A DNA stretch of 63,104 bases, the filler included, from Octopus bimaculoides (lineage: Eukaryota): assembly GCF_001194135.2 (NCBI RefSeq). It is 5 parts of 5 records of this genome, joined end to end, with 100 filler letters (N's around TTAATTAATTAA, not from the genome) between each part and the next. Parts side by side here need not be neighbours in the genome. Positions count along the whole stretch, not along the records: positions 19,192 to 45,135 come from NC_068982.1; 4 more parts are not named here. One strand, 5' to 3'. Shown one piece after another: positions 2,154 to 43,577 of this stretch. Below the pieces are notes generated by a model. It saw only the letters and a program-made list of their open reading frames with translations. It ran no database searches and was not told the origin of the DNA. The number at the start of each line of letters is the position of its first letter. Position 1 is the stretch's first letter. The position numbers were made by a program, and so were the translations under genes.

Positions 2154-3618
2154 CATACATACAGACATACAGACAGGCAGACAGACAGACAGACAGACAG
2201 ATATACATATATGTGTGTGTGTATATACATGCGTGTATATATATATATGTAAATACACACGTACACAAACATACATACAAGCACATACATATTTTAATTA
2301 ACAAGGGTGGAGCCTCTACATAGCTGCTCAAATTGCCATAAATAGCAGCCAATTTCCCCTCTGCCTCAGTCATGGCAGCTGTCTTTTCACACATCCAGAA
2401 AAAGTGAAGGAAAAAAAAAATGTGAATGATGAGACACGTTTGATGATGTAGTCCTTGGTATACGTTGCCTGGGATAAAGAGAACAGGACAGTCATGGCTG
2501 GAATCCTCTTGATCATAGATCTGCATGGTCAAAAGCTCTCCAGGGACTGAACAGTTTGGACAACAACAACAACAGCAAAAGAATACAAACGAACAGCAAC
2601 AACAACAACAACACCATCAGCAACAGAAGCAGCAACAGCGATTACAACAAAAAAACAATAACAGCAACAACTACTTAACAGTTACAATTATATCTATTTT
2701 AATTAACCATGTTCTCCCTCTCCCTCTCTCTCTCCCTCTTCTCTTCCTTTGTCTGTCTGTCTCTCTCTCTCTCTCTGTATCTCCCTCTCTCTCTCTCTCT
2801 GTCTGTCTCTCTCTTTCTCTCTCTCCTTAGTCACTGAAGGGAAAGCAGCACCTGTAACCTTTTACAAGGTTTGGGGTCTGGCGGTAGGAATGTAGTGGGG
2901 GTTGGAGAGTTATTTTCTCCCTCTCCCCCCCCCTCTCTCTTTCTCTAACCAGGGACCTGTTCCCTGAATAACTTTAACAAACCCAATTCACTTTTCTCCA
3001 CTAAGAGCACTTAATGGCCAGGGGTCAGCACTGGTGGTGCTGCTGTTGCTGCTGGTAGTGGTGATGGTGGCAGTAGTGGTATTTGTATTGGAGATAGTTG
3101 CTCTGGTGATGGTAATTGTGGTGGCGGGGTCGATGTGGTGATGGTGGAAATAGTGACAGTGGTGGAGATGGTGGTGGTGGTGGTGGNNNNNNNNNNNNNN
3201 NNNNNNNNNNNNNNNNNNNNNNNNNNNNNNNNNNNNNNNNNNNNNNNNNNNNNNNNNNNNNNNNNNNNNNNNNNNNNNNNNNNNNNNNNNNNNNNNNNNN
3301 NNNNNNNNNNNNNNNNNNNNNNNNNNNNNNNNNNNNNNNNNNNNNNNNNNNNNNNNNNNNNNNNNNNNNNNNNNNNNNNNNNNNNNNNNNNNNNNNNNNN
3401 NNNNNNNNNNNNNNNNNNNNNNNNNNNNNNNNNNNNNNNNNNNNNNNNNNNNNNNNNNNNNNNNNNNNNNNNNNNNNNNNNNNNNNNNNNNNNNNNNNNN
3501 NNNNNNNNNNNNNNNNNNNNNNNNNNNNNNNNNNNNNNNNNNNNNNNNNNNNNNNNNNNNNNNNNNNNNNNNNNNNNNNNNNNNNNNNNNNNNNNNNNNN
3601 NNNNNNNACAACAACAAC

Positions 3619-3690
<72 letters not shown>

Positions 3691-3691
3691 C

Positions 3692-3900
3692 CTTTCTACT
3701 AAAAGCACAAGGCCTGAAACGGGGGCAGGGGAGTTAGTCGATTACATCAACCCCAATGCATAACTGGTACTTATTTCATCAACTCTGAAAGGAGGAAAGG
3801 CGAAGTTGACCTCAGCGGAATTTGAACTCAGAACGCAAAGACAGGTGAAATACCGCTAAGCATATTGTCCAGCGTGCTAACGATTCTGCCAGCTCACCAA
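3692..3900 (-). mobile_element. tRNA-derived SINE family B
   Basis: Minus strand gagctggcagaatcgttagcacgc (A box) ... ctgagttcaaattccgc (B box); flanked by (AAT)n. Confidence 0.85.
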
Positions 3901-3954
3901 CTTCAGTAATAATAATAATAATAACGATAATAATAATAATAATAATAATAATAA

Positions 3955-4511
3955 ATGCCCGGATGCAGTACCAGGCAATGGCTCTCATGGCTTCTGATCT
4001 TAATTGATTGGAAGTGTTATCATGTACATTGTTTTGTCTTGGTATAAAAGATGGGTTACAGTAAATATTCTGCTCAATACCACAGATTTGCTTGTCAGTT
4101 GTTTGACCTTAACCAGTTGAGCATGTCCCTTGGTGGCTGACGATATGTGCATCTCTGATCATGAGCAGAAGTAATGGGGGAGCATCATAGCCATGTGCTT
4201 AGAGGAATTCTTTGGGGTTTGGATAATTCACCTTTGGAAACATGGGTGTTTCGTTCAACATCCTTAAACGAACCTTATTCAGAGACCTTTTGAGCGGAAT
4301 GGGCTACTCGACCTGAAGAAAATTCTAACTGGGCCCCACCTGCAAGGTCATGCACTGTTTATCCTCATATGAGATCACCATGTCGCGCACATATGGTTGT
4401 GATGCATGTGCCTGGTGTACCCTTATCAGACGGTTAATCATGGTGGGTACATTGGGCTTCGTATATTTGTACCCTATTGTCACTTTGATGGCATGCACTG
4501 CTCTCTCACTC
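3955..4511. repeat. Probable interspersed element bounded by (AAT)n on both sides
   Basis: Starts after the (AAT)n at 3905-3954 and ends in ctctctcactcaataat; no credible ORF; repeat status inferred and not checkable within this window. Confidence 0.4.
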
Positions 4512-4517
4512 AATAAT

Positions 4518-4822
4518 GAAGTTGGAAATAGGAAGAATTTGGTGCATGCGAACAGTAAGGGTCATGTCTATAATAATTGGTGCATTGGGAACAGTAAGGA
4601 AAGATGTAGACAAATGACTGAAGGAGATTGAAATAGAATGGCTGGTAGAGCTCCCGCAAAAAAAGTTTGTCTCTTAGGGATGGCAAGGATTATCAGGAGG
4701 GTTCTAAGCACTTGAAAGACGGCTGAAAACTTGTGGATACCCAAGGTTACAGGTAGTAACCAGCTATCCATATAATTCCTACCCGGAATAAGACCAAACC
4801 TGATCCAAACCAATATAATAAT
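4518..4822 (+). mobile_element. R4/Dong-like non-LTR retrotransposon 3' end (restriction-like endonuclease tail)
   Basis: KLEIGRIWCMRTVRVMSIIIGALGTVRKDVDK*LKEIEIEWLVELPQK-VCLLGMARIIRRVLST*, then 3'UTR ending aatataataat. Confidence 0.8.
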
Positions 4823-5318: not shown

Positions 5319-6173
5319 TGATTATAAATAAATAAATACATATATAATGTAGTTGTTCTTCTAAGAGTTCTTTTGTGGGGTTTTTTTCTTTGACTAGAGT
5401 TGCCTGTCATACTTGCATAGTCAGGATTTCATTAAACTAGACAGACACTCAATGTTGTATTGAAATCACACACACACANNNNNNNNNNNNNNNNNNNNNN
5501 NNNNNNNNNNNNNNNNNNNNNNNNNNNNNNNNNNNNNNNNNNNNNNNNNNNNNNNNNNNNNNTATATATATATATATATGTATATATACATACATATATA
5601 CATACATACATATATACATACATACATACATATATACATGCATACATACATACATACATATATACATACATATATACATACATATATATATATATAGATA
5701 TATATATATATATATATAAATATATATACATATACATACATTTGTGTATATATATAATATACATTTGTATGTATCTGTGTAGGTATAATGATATATAAAT
5801 ATATATATATTTATATTTGTGTGTCTATCTATATGCATAAGTATGTGTATGTGTGTCTGCAAGTTTTTTCTTGTTATTTTTTTTTATTCTTTTACCAAGT
5901 TTCAGTCATTGGACGAGAGCCATGAGCCATGCTGGGGCAGACATCAAGCTGTGTTGTTGTTGTTGTTATTGTTTCTATCGAACCTAACAAAGAGTTGTTA
6001 GTCTGATGCCGACTTCAACACTCTTGTAAAGTACAAAAAAAAATTCAGCGGACGTTGGGGTGAGAGAAAATAACCCCAGCCTCCTGTATCTGAACACATG
6101 AGACTACTTTGTGTTTTAACATCCCAGTTCTAAACCACTTTAATACAAACACACACACACACACACATATGCT

Positions 6174-6512
6174 GAGATCCCCTTCGGTCATGACTGACCA
6201 TGGGATTGCACCTAGAAAGTTAACCTCCCAGGCACAAGTCCGAGCAAGGTTGTTTTATGAAAGACCAGCGGTCGCCCATGCATACCGGTCTCCCCTCTCC
6301 ATGCCACTAGTGTTATCCAAGGGAAAGGCAAAGGCCGATATAGCTTGGCACCTGTGATGTCGCAACTCATTACTACAGGTGGGTTTAACTGGAGCAACGT
6401 GAAATAAAGTGTCTTGCTCAAGAACACAACACGCAGCCCCGGTCCGGGATTTGAACTCACAACCTCGCGATCGTAAGCTCGACGCTCTAACCACTGAGCC
6501 ATGTGCCTTCAC
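6174..6512 (-). mobile_element. tRNA-derived SINE family D with CORE/V/Meta-like central box
   Basis: Minus strand gtgaaggcacatggctcagtggttagagcg (A box), gagttcaaatccc (B box), gtgttcttgagcaagacactttatttcacgttgctccagt; near-identical copy at 16820. Confidence 0.9.
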
Positions 6513-26745: not shown

Positions 26746-26984
26746 TATGTTATTATTACAATCAATAAGCTATGACATGTTATTATTACATCAATAAGCT
26801 ATGACATGTTATTATTACATCAATTTATAATGCATGAACTATCCAATGAGTTTTTGTCAACAAAAATTTTTTTTTAAATCATAAGTACTTTTTCTATTTT
26901 TCATCAGCGGTTTATACAACAGGTCCTGCAGATTAATTAGCATAAATTATAATTTAGTCGGAAATGTAAAGTTAACATTATATC

Positions 26985-34446: not shown

Positions 34447-35046
34447 GGTCGCAGGAATGGCTGTGTGGTAAGTAGCTTGCTTACCAACCACATGGTTCCG
34501 GGTTCATTCCCACTGCGTGGCACTTTGGGCAAGTGTCTTCTACTATAGCCTCGGGCCGACCAAAGCCTTGTGAGTGGATTTGAGAGACGGAAACTGAAAG
34601 AAGCCCGTCATATATATATATATGTGTATATNNNNNNNNNNNNNNNNNNNNNNNNNNNNNNNNNNNNNNNNNNNNNNNNNNNNNNNNNNNNNNNNNNNNN
34701 NNNNNNNNNNNNNNNNNNNNNNNNNNNNNNNNNNNNNNNNNNNNNNNNNNNNNNNNNNNNNNNNNNNNNNNNNNNNNNNNNNNNNNNNNNNNNNNNNNNN
34801 NNNNNNNNNNNNNNATATATGCGTGTGTGTGTGTGTGAGTGTATTTGTGTGTCTGTGTTTGTCCCCCCCAACATCGTTTTGACAACCGATGGTGGTGTGT
34901 TTACGTCCCCTAACTTAGCGGTTCAGTAAAAGAGACCGATAGAATAAGTACTAGGCTTCCAAAGAATAAGTCCTGGGGTCGATTTGCTCGACTAAAGGTG
35001 GTGCTCCAGCATGGCCGCAGTCAAATGACTGAAACAAGTAAAAGAA
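34447..35046 (+). mobile_element. SINE family A, full length with gap in the microsatellite
   Basis: ggtcgcaggaatggctgtgtggtaagtagc..; tail to tgactgaaacaagtaaaag. Confidence 0.92.
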
Positions 35047-38864: not shown

Positions 38865-38929
<65 letters not shown>

Positions 38930-39673: not shown

Positions 39674-40912
39674 TCCTTTACTCTTTTACTTGTTTCAGTC
39701 ATTTGACTGTGGCCATGCTGGAGCACCGCCTTTAGTTAAATCAAATCGACCCCAGGACTTATTCTTTGGAAGCCTAGTACTTATTCTATCGGTCTCTTTT
39801 ACTGAACCGCTAAGTTAGGGGACGTAAACACACCAGATTCGGTTGTCCAGCGATGTTGGTGGTGGTGGGGTGAACAAACACAGACACACAAACTGCGGAT
39901 CTTTATGGTTTGACGGGCAACATTTTTTTATGTAGTGTTTTTGGTACCGAAACACTTTCAAACTTCGAATACTTGTATATTTTGTGTTATAGAACAGATA
40001 AAAAAATTTTGTATTCGAAGTTATTTCATGTAAAAAAATTGTCGTATTTCGGTAATTTCAACCAATCACTGACGTCTATTGAGGTGAAAACAATTACGCC
40101 GTGGAATATAAACAACGGTGTTACGGGATTTTTTCCCTTGAATAAAATTAGTGCCGTTGTTTGTCAACAAAAACTATCAGCGGTATATTTTTCGTTTGTC
40201 ACTGTTATTTAAGATATCGTTCATGCGTTTGTACTGGTTTTAGCTTTAGGGTTTTAGGGTTAGGGTTCGGGTTTTAGAGTTAGGGTTAGTTTTAGGATTA
40301 CGGTTAGGGTTATAATTATTTTTGCCATAATCTTAACTCTAACCCTATAACTCATAACCCTAACCCTAACCCTAACCCTAATCCCAACCCGAACCCGAAC
40401 CCTAACCCTAAAACCCGAACCCTAATCCTAAAACCCTAAACCCTTACTAGGGAATAATGATATAATTAAACAGGGAATAACACACTTGACACCGAACAGC
40501 ACTAACTGTATTCAGCTGAATAGACGTCAGTGATTGGTTGAAATTACAGAAATACGACAACTTTAACATGAAATAACTTTCGATGTACAATTTTTTGTTA
40601 AGAAGGTTAAGAGAAGTTGTTTTATATGACACATTCTACCAGTGTCCCAAGTTTGAAAGTGTTTCGTTAAGAAAACAAGTGTTGCCCGTCAAACCATAAA
40701 GATCCCAAACATATACACATACATACATGTACATATATATACATATATACGACGGGCTTCTTTCAGTTTCCGTCTACCAAATCCACACACAAGGCTTTGG
40801 TCGGCCCGAGGCTATAGTAGAAGACACATGCCCAAGGTGCTACGCAGTGGGACTGAACCCGGAACCATGTGGTTGGTAAGCCAGCTACTTACCACACAGC
40901 CACTCCTGCGCC
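39674..40912 (-). mobile_element. SINE family A split by the fold-back element
   Basis: Tail 39674-39893; head 40706-40912 resumes at caaacatatacac..gacgggcttc..cctgcgcc. Confidence 0.9.
39897..40705. mobile_element. Fold-back MITE-like element with central inverted telomeric repeats (possibly Merlin-type)
   Basis: Terminal GGATCTTTATGGTTTGACGGGCAACA / TGTTGCCCGTCAAACCATAAAGATCC; further mirrored blocks; TTAGGG-type tract ~40245-40311 and CCCTAA-type tract ~40335-40445; flanks CAAACTGC / CAAACATA. Confidence 0.85.
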
Positions 40913-40940
40913 TATGTATGCATATACAACAATACATATG

Positions 40941-41675: not shown

Positions 41676-43577
41676 AGTAATACACACGCACACACGTTTA
41701 TGTATGTATGTATATTCAAACATCAGGTAATGGAGTAAATAAAATCCAGGCTACATATGTGACATAGCTAGCGGAACCTCGGAAGTAGTAAATTATCCAA
41801 ATGACGGGTAGACCGTAAGCTACTCTTCAGGCCAATGATACCTTGATTATATGATGTTTAAATTGTCGTAGGAAGGTGCCATGTTAACTCTTGGGGGATT
41901 AGATCGAAATGCTCAACTAGTTAACATGAAACCTTCCAACGACAATTTAAACTTCATATAATCAAGGTATCAGTATTTGGGTTTATTTTTTGATTTGGTT
42001 GAAGCTTGGTTCGTTTTCTTTTTCTCTGTTGGTCAGTTATTTTTAGCGTTTTGACAGAAAAAGTCATTCTAAAATTGTCTTTGTTTTTTAACGTAAACGT
42101 GCCCAAACAAGTCGAATGCTTACACAGAGCAGGTTTTACAGCATTCAAACCGACCGGATGAGACCGGGCTTAGCTTCTAGGATATNNNNNNNNNNNNNNN
42201 NNNNNNNNNNNNNNNNNNNNNNNNNNNNNNNNNNNNNNNNNNNNNNNNNNNNNNNNNNNNNNNNNNNNNNNNNNNNNNNNNNNNNNNNNNNNNNNNNNNN
42301 NNNNNNNNNNNNNNNNNNNNNNNNNNNNNNNNNNNNNNNNNNNNNNNNNNNNNNNNNNNNNNNNNNNNNNNNNNNNNNNNNNNNNNNNNNNNNNNNNNNN
42401 NNNNNNNNNNNNNNNNNNNNNNNNNNNNNNNNNNNNNNNNNNNNNNNNNNNNNNNNNNNNNNNNNNNNNNNNNNNNNNNNNNNNNNNNNNNNNNNNNNNN
42501 NNNNNNNNNNNNNNNNNNNNNNNNNNNNNNNNNNNNNNNNNNNNNNNNNNNNNNNNNNNNNNNNNNNNNNNNNNNNNNNNNNNNNNNNNNNNNNNNNNNN
42601 NNNNNNNNNNNNNNNNNNNNNNNNNNNNNNNNNNNNNNNNNNNNNNNNNNNNNNNNNNNNNNNNNNNNNNNNNNNNNNNNNNNNNNNNNNNNNNNNNNNN
42701 NNNNNNNNNNNNNNNNNNNNNNNNNNNNNNNNNNNNNNNNNNNNNNNNNNNNNNNNNNNNNNNNNNNNNNNNNNNNNNNNNNNNNNNNNNNNNNNNNNNN
42801 NNNNNNNNNNNNNNNNNNNNNNNNNNNNNNNNNNNNNNNNNNNNNNNNNNNNNNNNNNNNNNNNNNNNNNNNNNNNNNNNNNNNNNNNNNNNNNNNNNNN
42901 NNNNNNNNNNNNNNNNNNNNNNNNNNNNNNNNNNNNNNNNNNNNNNNNNNNNNNNNNNNNNNNNNNNNNNNNNNNNNNNNNNNNNNNNNNNNNNNNNNNN
43001 NNNNNNNNNNNNNNNNNNNNNNNNNNNNNNNNNNNNNNNNNNNNNNNNNNNNNNNNNNNNNNNNNNNNNNNNNNNNNNNNNNNNNNNNNNNNNNNNTCCC
43101 CCCGACCCTTTTTCTGTTCCCTCTTCATCCCATTTCTTTTTCTACCGGATTGTCGTTCTGCTGGTCCACCACCACTGTCACTAACACCAGAACAACAACA
43201 ACAACAAGGCCCCCCACCATAACAACGTCATTGACAATAGCAACAGGCGGCGATAGCTTAACCCCCCTAACCCTCACACTCCTAAACAAACTCTTTAGCC
43301 TGAATTACGTCACCTGTCACATTCCCTTCCGCCCCCTCCTCCAACACACCTCTCCCTCAAAATTTCCCACTTCATATTTCTCTCCCAACCACTCTCTACC
43401 ACCCTTTCTCACACACTCTCTCCCCCTCTCCTTCTTTCTCTCTCTCTCTCTCGCTTAGTATATATATATATGTATGTACGTATGTATGTATTTCTATGTC
43501 TTGTTTTCCGCATATTTTCATATAACGAGCATACTCTGTGTGTAGTTCTCTCTCTCCCTCCCTCTGTCTCTGTTGTC

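What the first reader, a model, noticed from the sequence alone, without database searches (positions are those of the whole stretch)
39897..40705. Mobile fold-back element carrying a head-to-head telomere core
Seen: an ~810-bp imperfect palindrome with a perfect 26-bp terminal IR and further mirrored blocks (cgaaacactttcaaactt; ttgtcgtatttc.gtaatttcaaccaatcactgacgtctatt). The centre is (TTAGGG)n, a ~20-nt spacer, then (CCCTAA)n. Variant units (TTCGGG, TTTTAGGG) occur in mirrored order, so the arms derive from one inverted duplication. The element interrupts a SINE whose halves rejoin exactly, and its flanks CAAACTGC/CAAACATA fit an 8-bp TSD with the first 5 bases intact. Known: TTAGGG is the mollusc telomere repeat, this is the telomere-fusion orientation, and GG...CC ends with 8-bp TSDs fit Merlin. 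Inference: a transposon that spreads interstitial telomeric sequence. A break at its centre would leave two ends with the G-strand running toward the break, i.e. ready telomerase seeds, plus G-quadruplex and telomere-protein binding potential. I do not recognise a described family with this design.
Basis: partly seen in the sequence, partly recalled or inferred. Interest (0 to 1): 0.8.

Follow-up and report, generated by a model that had tools for sequence, protein, structure and literature searches.

The report
Octopus jumping gene carrying telomere repeats
This 809-bp stretch is a small non-coding "jumping gene" of an octopus genome, most likely moved by a Merlin-type transposase. Its middle holds two short runs of the chromosome-end repeat TTAGGG facing each other, so each jump plants telomere-like DNA inside a chromosome.

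Summary
Window 39897-40705 is an 809-bp imperfect palindrome with perfect 26-bp terminal inverted repeats (GG...CC), a (TTAGGG)-like array, a ~21-nt spacer and a (CCCTAA)-like array. It sits in the microsatellite core of a SINE.

I found a second copy in Octopus bimaculoides contig LGKD02092233.1 (L008 5575-6284):
- It is 94.8% identical to the window copy.
- Its flanks are unrelated to the window's.
- It has a perfect 8-bp target-site duplication (TAACGTTG).
- It carries the same telomeric core and spacer, with the variant units in the same order.

So the element is mobile, and the telomeric core belongs to the family, not to one locus. In that contig, about 1 kb from the second copy, a Merlin transposase gene (Pfam DDE_Tnp_IS1595) is followed by an element end. 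That end shares the terminal GGATCTTT and a 49-column subterminal block (88-90% identical) with the element's left arm.

Best reading: a non-autonomous, fold-back Merlin-superfamily transposon with a head-to-head telomere-repeat cargo.

Not shown: copy number, an autonomous partner with the identical repeat, any telomere-related function, and whether Repbase or Dfam already lists the family. The arrays are short and degenerate, so telomere seeding is only a possibility. I rate it a new variant of a known kind, of moderate interest.

The parts
39684..39896 (-). Host SINE, 3' (tail-side) part, up to the start of its variable microsatellite core
   Evidence: 84-89% identical to other SINE copies in the piece. 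The host copy is 3.5% from the local consensus, both halves together.
39889..39896 (.). Left flank CAAACTGC, a candidate degraded 8-bp target-site duplication
   Evidence: Shares 5 of 8 bases with the right flank. The 8-bp TSD length comes from the second copy.
39897..39922 (+). Left terminal inverted repeat, 26 bp: GGATCTTTATGGTTTGACGGGCAACA
   Evidence: Only two matches in the window, 0 expected by chance. Homology with the L008 copy begins exactly here.
39923..40235 (+). Left arm (subterminal region). Positions 39926-39984 are homologous to the end next to a Merlin transposase gene in L008.
   Evidence: blastn gives 59 nt at 91.5% to L008 4505-4563. In the alignment, 88-90% identity to the Merlin end over the 49-column core of that block, against 74-76% to the element's own right arm.
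40039..40080 (+). Conserved 42-nt block, left copy. Contains CCAATCA and TGACGTC. Candidate transposase-binding or promoter remnant.
   Evidence: 41 of 42 identical to the reverse complement of 40519-40560. Identical in the L008 copy. The proposed function is inferred only.
40236..40312 (+). G-strand telomere-like array, about 12 units, with a 20-nt higher-order unit TTTTAGGG-TTAGGG-TTCGGG
   Evidence: Tandem-repeat periods 6 and 20. Unit parsing and one G-quadruplex motif. Differs by 1 nt from the L008 copy.
40313..40333 (.). Central asymmetric spacer TAATTATTTTTGCCATAATCT, the loop of the fold-back
   Evidence: Conserved in the L008 copy with 3 substitutions.
40334..40445 (-). C-strand array, which reads as TTAGGG on the minus strand. 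About 20 units, including four consecutive perfect repeats.
   Evidence: Tandem-repeat period 6, 15.5 copies. Eight overlapping G-quadruplex motifs on the minus strand. About 76 nt shorter in the L008 copy.
40446..40679 (-). Right arm (subterminal region)
   Evidence: 97% identical to L008 6018-6284. Aligns to the left arm with many indels.
40519..40560 (-). Conserved 42-nt block, right copy
40680..40705 (-). Right terminal inverted repeat, 26 bp, perfect complement of the left one
   Evidence: Homology with the L008 copy ends exactly here.
40706..40713 (.). Right flank CAAACATA, a candidate degraded TSD copy
40706..40915 (-). Host SINE, rest of the microsatellite core and the 5' (head-side) part
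   Evidence: 89-96% identical to other SINE copies in the piece. Consensus comparison.

Best explanation
The feature is one copy of a family of short (about 0.7-0.8 kb), non-coding, fold-back DNA transposons of an octopus genome (Octopus bimaculoides or a close relative). It most likely belongs to the Merlin superfamily.

Proposed mechanism:
1. A Merlin (IS1595-like DDE) transposase made elsewhere binds the two GG-terminated 26-bp terminal inverted repeats. It probably also binds subterminal sites such as the conserved 42-nt block.
2. It cuts the element out and inserts it at a staggered 8-bp cut, which creates the 8-bp target-site duplication.
3. The telomere-like core travels as cargo. It consists of about 12 and about 20 degenerate TTAGGG units, with G-strands pointing at each other across a 21-nt spacer.

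Proposed origin of the core: an inverted duplication of an arm that already carried a short TTAGGG-derived minisatellite. The arrays then changed length by slippage.

Net effect: the family scatters short head-to-head interstitial telomeric sequences, which are also strong hairpin or cruciform formers, through the genome.

Shown here: the element's boundaries, TIRs, an 8-bp TSD, at least two loci, conservation of the core, and similarity to an end next to a Merlin gene.

Inferred: mobilisation in trans by Merlin transposase, the origin of the core, and any effect on the host.
For: Structure:
- Perfect 26-bp TIRs that are unique in the window.
- Fold-back arms with a fold z-score of -26.5.
- No ORF with any homologue.

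Mobility:
- The element interrupts a SINE whose five other copies in the piece lack it.
- A second copy in O. bimaculoides contig LGKD02092233.1 (L008 5575-6284) has homology that starts and stops exactly at GG...CC. Its flanks are unrelated and its 8-bp TSD TAACGTTG is perfect. The chance of an 8/8 match at a fixed position is about 1.5e-5.

The core is a family feature:
- Both copies share the arrays, the variant order and the spacer.
- The copies differ by 5.2% and the host SINE is 3.5% from its consensus. The two arms differ by 15% plus 26 gap events.
- So the imperfect palindrome, core included, predates both insertions.

Merlin link:
- 5'-GG termini, TIRs of 24-462 bp and 8-9-bp TSDs define the superfamily, and O. 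bimaculoides is unusually rich in Merlin, with 191 transposase hits (PMC8101967).
- In L008 a DDE_Tnp_IS1595 gene (62.7 bits, cut-off 27) is followed about 550 bp downstream by an end terminating in AAAGATCC.
- That end's subterminal 49 columns are 88-90% identical to the element's left arm.
- Another GG-terminated MITE with a 7/8 8-bp TSD is nested in the O. sinensis Merlin gene.
Against: - Only two copies could be examined. Copy number is unknown.
- No autonomous element with the same 26-bp TIR was found. The Merlin-linked end in L008 matches the TIR at only 62-66%, and its left end could not be located.
- The related O. sinensis Merlin (82% amino-acid identity) has quite different 42-nt TIRs. 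The MITE-like end in L008 could therefore be a separate fragment that merely abuts the Merlin copy.
- The window copy's own TSD is only 5 of 8.
- hAT and P elements also make 8-bp TSDs (own knowledge).
- Nothing tests transposase binding or any role for the core.
Confidence: 0.8

Rival explanations
1. It is a non-autonomous cut-and-paste transposon, but of another superfamily that makes 8-bp duplications (hAT, P or similar). The neighbouring Merlin gene in L008 would be coincidental.
For: - No Merlin copy with the identical TIR was found.
- The L008 end matches the TIR at only 62-66%.
- The O. sinensis relative of that Merlin has different ends.
Against: - The termini are GG...CC, as in all described Merlin families (PMC8101967). 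They are not the CA/TA-type termini usual for hAT and P (own knowledge).
- A 49-column block is 88-90% identical to an end lying 550 bp downstream of a Merlin ORF, in the correct orientation.
- The two TSDs do not fit the hAT nTnnnnAn pattern (own knowledge).
Confidence: 0.12
2. The telomeric core is not inert cargo but is used. For example, it recruits telomere-binding proteins or forms G-quadruplexes or hairpins that help transposition or silencing. Alternatively, copies serve the host as ready-made telomere seeds after breakage.
For: - The core is retained in both copies, with only 1 substitution in 77 nt of the G-strand array.
- The orientation is such that a central break exposes G-strands running toward the break.
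- G-quadruplex motifs lie on both strands.
- There are five exact TTAGGGTTAGGG dimers.
Against: - The rest of the element is about as well conserved between the two copies, so there is no excess constraint on the core.
- The C-strand array has lost about 76 nt in one copy without loss of the ends.
- The arrays are short (77 and 112 nt) and degenerate, with at most four perfect repeats in a row. Efficient telomere seeding in human cells needs a few hundred bp of perfect repeats (own knowledge).
- The 20-nt higher-order period points to slippage, not telomerase synthesis.
Confidence: 0.1
3. It is not a transposon. It would be a relic of a telomere-telomere fusion, or of telomeric DNA captured during double-strand-break repair at this locus.
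For: The head-to-head orientation is that of fusion-type interstitial telomeric sequence.
Against: - The same 0.7-0.8-kb unit, with identical boundaries and TIRs, occurs at a second, unrelated locus with a perfect 8-bp TSD.
- It sits inside a SINE, and both conserved SINE parts are present on either side.
Confidence: 0.01
4. It is an assembly or sequencing artefact, such as a chimeric fold-back read.
For: The piece is a gappy draft scaffold with 3,035 N.
Against: - The arms differ by 15% and 26 gap events, unlike an artefactual perfect palindrome.
- The same asymmetric structure is present in an independent contig.
Confidence: 0.01

Closest known systems
Merlin superfamily DNA transposons and their non-autonomous derivatives (Feschotte 2004, as summarised in PMC8101967)
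   Same: - 5'-GG termini, a TIR within the 24-462-bp range, and an 8-bp TSD.
- The host lineage is exceptionally rich in Merlin.
- Sequence similarity to an end next to a DDE_Tnp_IS1595 gene.
   Different: - It has no transposase of its own.
- It is almost entirely a fold-back.
- It carries head-to-head telomere-type arrays. None of the papers retrieved in ten full-text searches describes that for a Merlin element.
Tandem-repeat-containing MITEs of molluscs (DTC84 of the clam Donax trunculus, PMC3879986; 'pearl'-type elements, own knowledge)
   Same: A short non-autonomous mollusc element with TIR-bearing arms around a central block of short tandem repeats or a microsatellite whose copy number varies between copies.
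   Different: Here the repeat is the telomere motif, and it is present as two arrays in inverted orientation as part of a palindrome. It is not one direct array. No sequence relationship was tested.
Foldback-type transposons (Drosophila FB, Galileo, sea-urchin TU elements; own knowledge)
   Same: Long inverted arms make up nearly the whole element, the arms contain tandem repeats, and the element has strong hairpin potential.
   Different: This element is far smaller. Its arms are mostly unique sequence, with repeats only at the inner ends. Its termini and TSD point to Merlin. No homology with those families is claimed or tested.
Fusion-type interstitial telomeric sequence (e.g. human 2q13; own knowledge)
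   Same: (TTAGGG)n facing (CCCTAA)n with degenerate units.
   Different: That is a unique locus created by chromosome fusion. This is a bounded, TIR-flanked, TSD-flanked unit present at two or more loci.
Ciliate telomere-bearing transposons (Oxytricha TBE1, Euplotes Tec, Tetrahymena Tel-1; own knowledge)
   Same: DNA transposons that contain the host's telomere repeat.
   Different: In the ciliate elements the repeats are at the outer tips of the TIRs. Here they are at the centre, facing each other.

Membership tests
Merlin superfamily (non-autonomous member) | TIRs of about 24-462 bp that begin with 5'-GG | tested here: met
   Perfect 26-bp TIR GGATCTTTATGG... in the window copy and GGATCTTTGGGG... 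in the L008 copy. Criterion from PMC8101967.
Merlin superfamily (non-autonomous member) | 8- or 9-bp target-site duplication | tested here: met
   L008 copy: TAACGTTG on both sides, 8 of 8. Window copy: CAAACTGC / CAAACATA, 5 of 8, in a microsatellite.
Merlin superfamily (non-autonomous member) | An autonomous relative with matching ends that encodes a DDE_Tnp_IS1595 transposase | tested here: inconclusive
   The L008 gene at 3223-4056 scores 62.7 bits against PF12762. An end at 4470-4602 shares the terminal 8 nt, and 88-90% of a 49-column subterminal block, with the element's left arm. The TIR itself is only 62-66% identical. The left end was not found. The O. sinensis relative has other TIRs.
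MITE (miniature inverted-repeat transposable element) | Short, non-coding, with TIRs and a TSD | tested here: met
   809 and 710 bp. ORFs of at most 100 aa with no homologues. TIRs and TSD as above.
MITE (miniature inverted-repeat transposable element) | Moderate to high copy number | not testable with these tools
   No octopus genome can be searched by DNA here. There are two copies in about 31 kb of examined sequence (the window piece plus the O. bimaculoides contig L008) and none in 83 kb of O. sinensis / O. vulgaris. The sampling is biased.
Fusion-type or repair-type interstitial telomeric sequence | A unique locus without transposon ends, created in place | tested here: not met
   The same unit lies at a second, unrelated locus with TIRs and a TSD.
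Tandem-repeat-containing mollusc MITEs (DTC84-like) | A central direct array of core repeats, linked to a microsatellite, between TIR-bearing arms | tested here: not met
   The general layout is similar, but the arrays here are two inverted telomere-type arrays within a palindrome. Sequence homology was not tested. Family description from the abstract of PMC3879986.

The most novel reading that the evidence does not exclude
The palindrome records its own birth at a chromosome end. On this reading, a Merlin end that came to lie next to a telomere (or was healed by telomerase) was turned into a two-ended, transposition-competent element. This would have happened by sister-chromatid or hairpin telomere-telomere fusion. 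The resulting family would now disperse head-to-head telomeric sequence that acts as fragile sites, telomere-protein binding sites or latent telomere seeds. It would thereby influence chromosome breakage and healing in cephalopod karyotype evolution.
Probability: 0.1. Interest if true: 0.8.

Novelty: new variant of a known kind. Interest (0 to 1): 0.45.

Why it matters
Interstitial telomeric sequences are usually read as scars of chromosome fusion or of break repair. This is a clear case in which a cut-and-paste transposon carries a head-to-head telomeric block as part of its family consensus and deposits it at new sites.

- Some 'fusion-type' interstitial telomeric sequences in cephalopod (and perhaps other) assemblies should be read as transposon insertions, not as karyotype history.
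- Each copy also adds a strong hairpin or cruciform former and G-quadruplex motifs, which are known kinds of replication obstacle. A multi-copy family could therefore matter for genome stability.
- The family also gives a handle on Merlin biology in the animal genome where Merlin is reported to be unusually abundant.
- The mirrored change in both TIRs between the two copies suggests that the ends of a fold-back element evolve in concert.

Tried and rejected
1. Other copies in the 26-kb piece: none (blastn; TIR search).
2. Copies found through spurious ORFs in the 5.8-billion-protein collection: the 100-aa ORF and a 723-aa concatenate of all six-frame segments of both arms gave nothing.
3. TIR scan of viral contigs: nothing.
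4. 20-nt TIR scan of JGI metagenomes: four hits, all G+C-rich contigs (presumably prokaryotic) sharing only those 20-22 nt. I take them as chance matches in a very large collection.
5. Rfam: no family in the piece.
6. Eight further Merlin look-ups:
   - P0014, P0018, P0023, P0027, P0015 and P0011: the loci contain neither the octopus SINE nor the element.
   - P0003 and P0005: the contig ends show no similar terminus, and no hits.
   - P0012: a complete but unrelated Merlin with its own TIR.
7. Left end of the L008 Merlin: only a weak 16/18 match at 2677-2694.
8. Heterogeneity test of arm conservation: the longest perfect runs (29, 29 and 26 columns) are only marginally unusual (P = 0.34 for the longest run, 0.04 for the top two). 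I do not claim selective constraint on the TIR from this copy alone.
9. Ten full-text literature searches found no description of a DNA transposon with an internal head-to-head telomeric core. Absence from this library does not prove novelty, and Repbase and Dfam could not be consulted.
10. Considered and rejected on structure: Penelope-like or other retroelement tails joined tail to tail (two independent truncations would not end at the same base with a perfect TIR); herpesvirus-type telomeric repeats (those are direct, not inverted; own knowledge); Helitron or Crypton (no TIRs; own knowledge).

Full report
**1. What is there**

Window 39897-40705 (809 bp) begins GGATCTTTATGGTTTGACGGGCAACA and ends with the exact reverse complement. 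This 26-mer occurs nowhere else in the window, and none is expected by chance.

The two halves align as an imperfect palindrome: 291 matches, 51 mismatches and 26 gap events, which is 85% identity in ungapped columns. Two blocks stand out:
- CGAAACACTTTCAAACTT at 39948-39965 and 40649-40666.
- A 42-nt block at 40039-40080 and 40519-40560 with one mismatch. It contains CCAATCA and TGACGTC.

As single-stranded DNA the element folds into one long hairpin of -198 kcal/mol. Shuffles give -78 +/- 4.5, so z = -26.5.

The centre has three parts:
- a G-strand telomere-type array at 40236-40312;
- a 21-nt asymmetric spacer at 40313-40333;
- a C-strand array at 40334-40445.

Reading inward, both arms start TTTAGGG, TTTTAGGx, TTAGGG, TTCGGG, TTTTAGxG, TTAGGG, so the mirrored order of variants is real. 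The arrays have a 20-nt higher-order period, TTTTAGGG-TTAGGG-TTCGGG. There are at most two (left) and four (right) consecutive perfect TTAGGG units. Apart from one isolated 1-mismatch 12-mer at 43265, they are the only telomere-repeat matches in the piece. TTAGGG is the only experimentally determined cephalopod telomere motif (PMC13218726).

**2. Context**

The element sits inside a tRNA-derived SINE in minus orientation. It lies within the SINE's hypervariable microsatellite core, and five other copies of the SINE in the piece lack it. The host SINE copy is 3.5% from the local consensus (13 of 367 sites).

The immediate flanks are CAAACTGC and CAAACATA, which match at 5 of 8 positions. In this microsatellite-rich piece, adjacent 8-mers share their first five bases at 4.2% of all positions. 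This copy alone therefore does not establish a TSD. The claim that the SINE halves 'rejoin exactly' cannot be checked base by base.

The piece is a gappy draft scaffold without evident genes, and Rfam finds nothing in it.

**3. Finding relatives**

Direct routes failed. There is no further copy in the piece, nothing in viral contigs, and only chance 20-mers in metagenomes. Two searches of the protein collection with element-derived peptides also found nothing.

The route that worked was indirect:
1. A survey of Merlin transposons states the superfamily's hallmarks: TIRs of 24-462 bp starting 5'-GG, and 8- or 9-bp TSDs. It also reports that Octopus bimaculoides has an unusually high number of Merlin transposase sequences, 191 (PMC8101967).
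2. I took one of those proteins (KOF79200.1) from the paper's supplement and searched with it.
3. I fetched the genomic loci of the octopus hits.

Contig LGKD02092233.1 of O. bimaculoides (L008, 8,016 bp) contains a second copy of the element at 5575-6284.

**4. What the second copy shows**

- Homology with the window copy starts exactly at GGATC and ends exactly at GATCC. The flanks are unrelated.
- The copy is bracketed by a perfect 8-bp direct repeat, TAACGTTG.
- The copies are 94.8% identical in aligned columns, with 7 indels.
- All the asymmetries between left and right arms are shared by both copies.
- The G-strand array differs by one base and the spacer by three substitutions.
- The main difference is that about 76 nt of the C-strand array are missing from L008 (or were gained in the window copy).

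Copy-to-copy divergence (5%) and host-SINE age (3.5% from consensus) are both far below arm-to-arm divergence (15% plus 26 gap events). The imperfect palindrome, telomeric core included, therefore already existed in the common ancestor of the two copies and was competent to transpose.

**5. Which transposase**

In L008 a gene at 3223-4056 encodes a 277-aa protein that matches Pfam DDE_Tnp_IS1595 at 62.7 bits (cut-off 27). About 550 bp downstream, in the orientation expected for a right end, the sequence terminates in ...AAAGATCC at position 4602.

Aligned with the element:
- This end shares the terminal GGATCTTT.
- It is only 62-66% identical over the rest of the TIR.
- It is 88-90% identical to the element's left arm over a 49-column subterminal block.
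- The element's own two arms are only 74-76% identical over that same block.

The element's outer arms are therefore a mosaic. The TIRs are kept identical between the two arms, while the left subterminal region shares recent ancestry with a Merlin-associated end.

The case is not closed, for three reasons:
- The left end of that Merlin copy could not be found. There is only a 16/18 match at 2677-2694 next to a microsatellite.
- The O. sinensis relative (L009 9415-11751; transposase 82% identical) has different 42-nt GG-starting TIRs. It shares only an inner arm motif with the L008 end.

I put superfamily membership at roughly 0.75, and 'cut-and-paste TIR transposon with an 8-bp TSD' at above 0.95.

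**6. How it most likely works**

Shown: a bounded unit with perfect TIRs and an 8-bp TSD, present at two or more unrelated sites, non-coding, with a conserved head-to-head telomeric core.

Inferred:
- A Merlin transposase supplied in trans binds the TIRs, and perhaps the conserved 42-nt block, then excises and reinserts the element.
- The core is cargo. Its 20-nt higher-order period and the length difference between copies point to slippage of a telomere-derived minisatellite rather than to fresh telomerase synthesis.
- The inner arms (42-nt block plus arrays) look like one inverted duplication. The outer arms may instead descend from the two ends of a Merlin progenitor, or may have been refreshed by recombination with one.

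**7.

The geometry is as stated: on either side of the centre the G-strand runs 5'->3' toward it. G-quadruplex motifs exist, one on the plus strand and eight overlapping on the minus strand. There are five exact TTAGGGTTAGGG dimers.

The arrays are only 77 and 112 nt long and are degenerate. From my own knowledge, efficient telomere seeding in human cells needs a few hundred bp of perfect repeats. Nothing here tests protein binding, breakage or healing. I treat these ideas as possible consequences, not as the mechanism.

**8. Novelty**

MITEs with central tandem repeats are known in molluscs (DTC84; PMC3879986). Merlin MITEs and fold-back elements are known kinds. Telomere repeats at transposon tips are known in ciliates (own knowledge).

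Ten full-text searches found no description of a Merlin-type, or any other, DNA transposon with an internal head-to-head telomeric core. Repbase and Dfam could not be checked. I rate it a new variant of a known kind, with interest 0.45.

**9. Rough abundance (inference)**

I found a copy in the single 8-kb O. bimaculoides contig that I fetched for an unrelated reason. That implies one of two things: a high copy number (on the order of 10^4 or more in an assumed ~2.7-Gb genome, for such a find to have at least a 5% chance), or a non-random association with Merlin copies, such as local hopping. No copy was seen in 83 kb of O. sinensis and O. vulgaris sequence. Only a genome-wide search can settle this.

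Noticed in passing
window 39905-39906 and 40696-40697; L008 5583-5584 and 6275-6276: The two copies differ at TIR positions 9-10 (AT in the window, GG in L008). The change is mirrored in the right TIR of each copy, so each copy keeps a perfect 26-bp inverted pair although the arms are otherwise old and diverged. This suggests arm-to-arm conversion, or one end templating the other.
   Followed up: partly
L009 10779-11248 (O. sinensis VCDQ01004827.1): A ~470-bp MITE with perfect 44-nt TIRs starting GGGCGATG and a 7/8 8-bp TSD (CAAAAGAG / CAGAAGAG) is nested inside the Merlin transposase gene. It is another GG-terminated, 8-bp-TSD element in an octopus.
   Followed up: partly
L009 9415-11751: A 2.3-kb Merlin element of O. 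sinensis with 42-nt GG-starting TIRs (86% complementary). Its subterminal arms contain repeated TGACGTCA motifs, reminiscent of the TGACGTC in the conserved 42-nt block of the element studied here.
   Followed up: partly
L005 552-2892 (O. sinensis CM016860.1): A 2.3-kb fold-back structure with 254-nt perfectly complementary arm segments and (TA)n arrays in both arms. It carries, in inverted pairs, a 33-nt motif 94% identical to the inner arm of the L008 Merlin end. It is possibly another Merlin-derived fold-back family, with a different repeat cargo.
   Followed up: partly
L016-L018 (Logan runs SRR22455140, SRR22455138 and SRR22455136, organism unknown): Contigs of 1,059-1,061 bp, each a complete compact Merlin. 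It has a 29-bp TIR GGTACTTCTACAGAACAGCCCACCCATGG and an intact 299-aa DDE_Tnp_IS1595 ORF. The family is unrelated but is a clean example of the GG-terminus rule.
   Followed up: no
window 22837-22929, 34632-34843 and other N runs: Assembly gaps (runs of N) fall inside the microsatellite cores of SINE copies. The SINE's internal (CA)n/(TA)n core seems to be a frequent breaker of this draft assembly.
   Followed up: no
L008 275-884 and 1374-1988: Two further inverted-repeat structures (77-nt arms at 97% complementarity; 63-124-nt arms at 81-86%) lie upstream of the Merlin gene. They are probably other MITEs.
   Followed up: no
L008 4054-4130: The Merlin ORF ends at a stop codon but continues in frame as RYEFKDEIFQKLLEQIRHLYPCV, which matches the intact C-terminus seen in L009 (11300-11380). 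The L008 transposase gene therefore carries a premature stop and is probably inactive.
   Followed up: partly
window 26747-26824; 38868-38927; 43265-43276: A 29-bp tandem repeat (2.7 copies) lies next to a SINE tail. There is a perfect (TAT)20 microsatellite. A lone telomere-like dimer, TGAGGGTTAGGG, lies outside the element.
   Followed up: no
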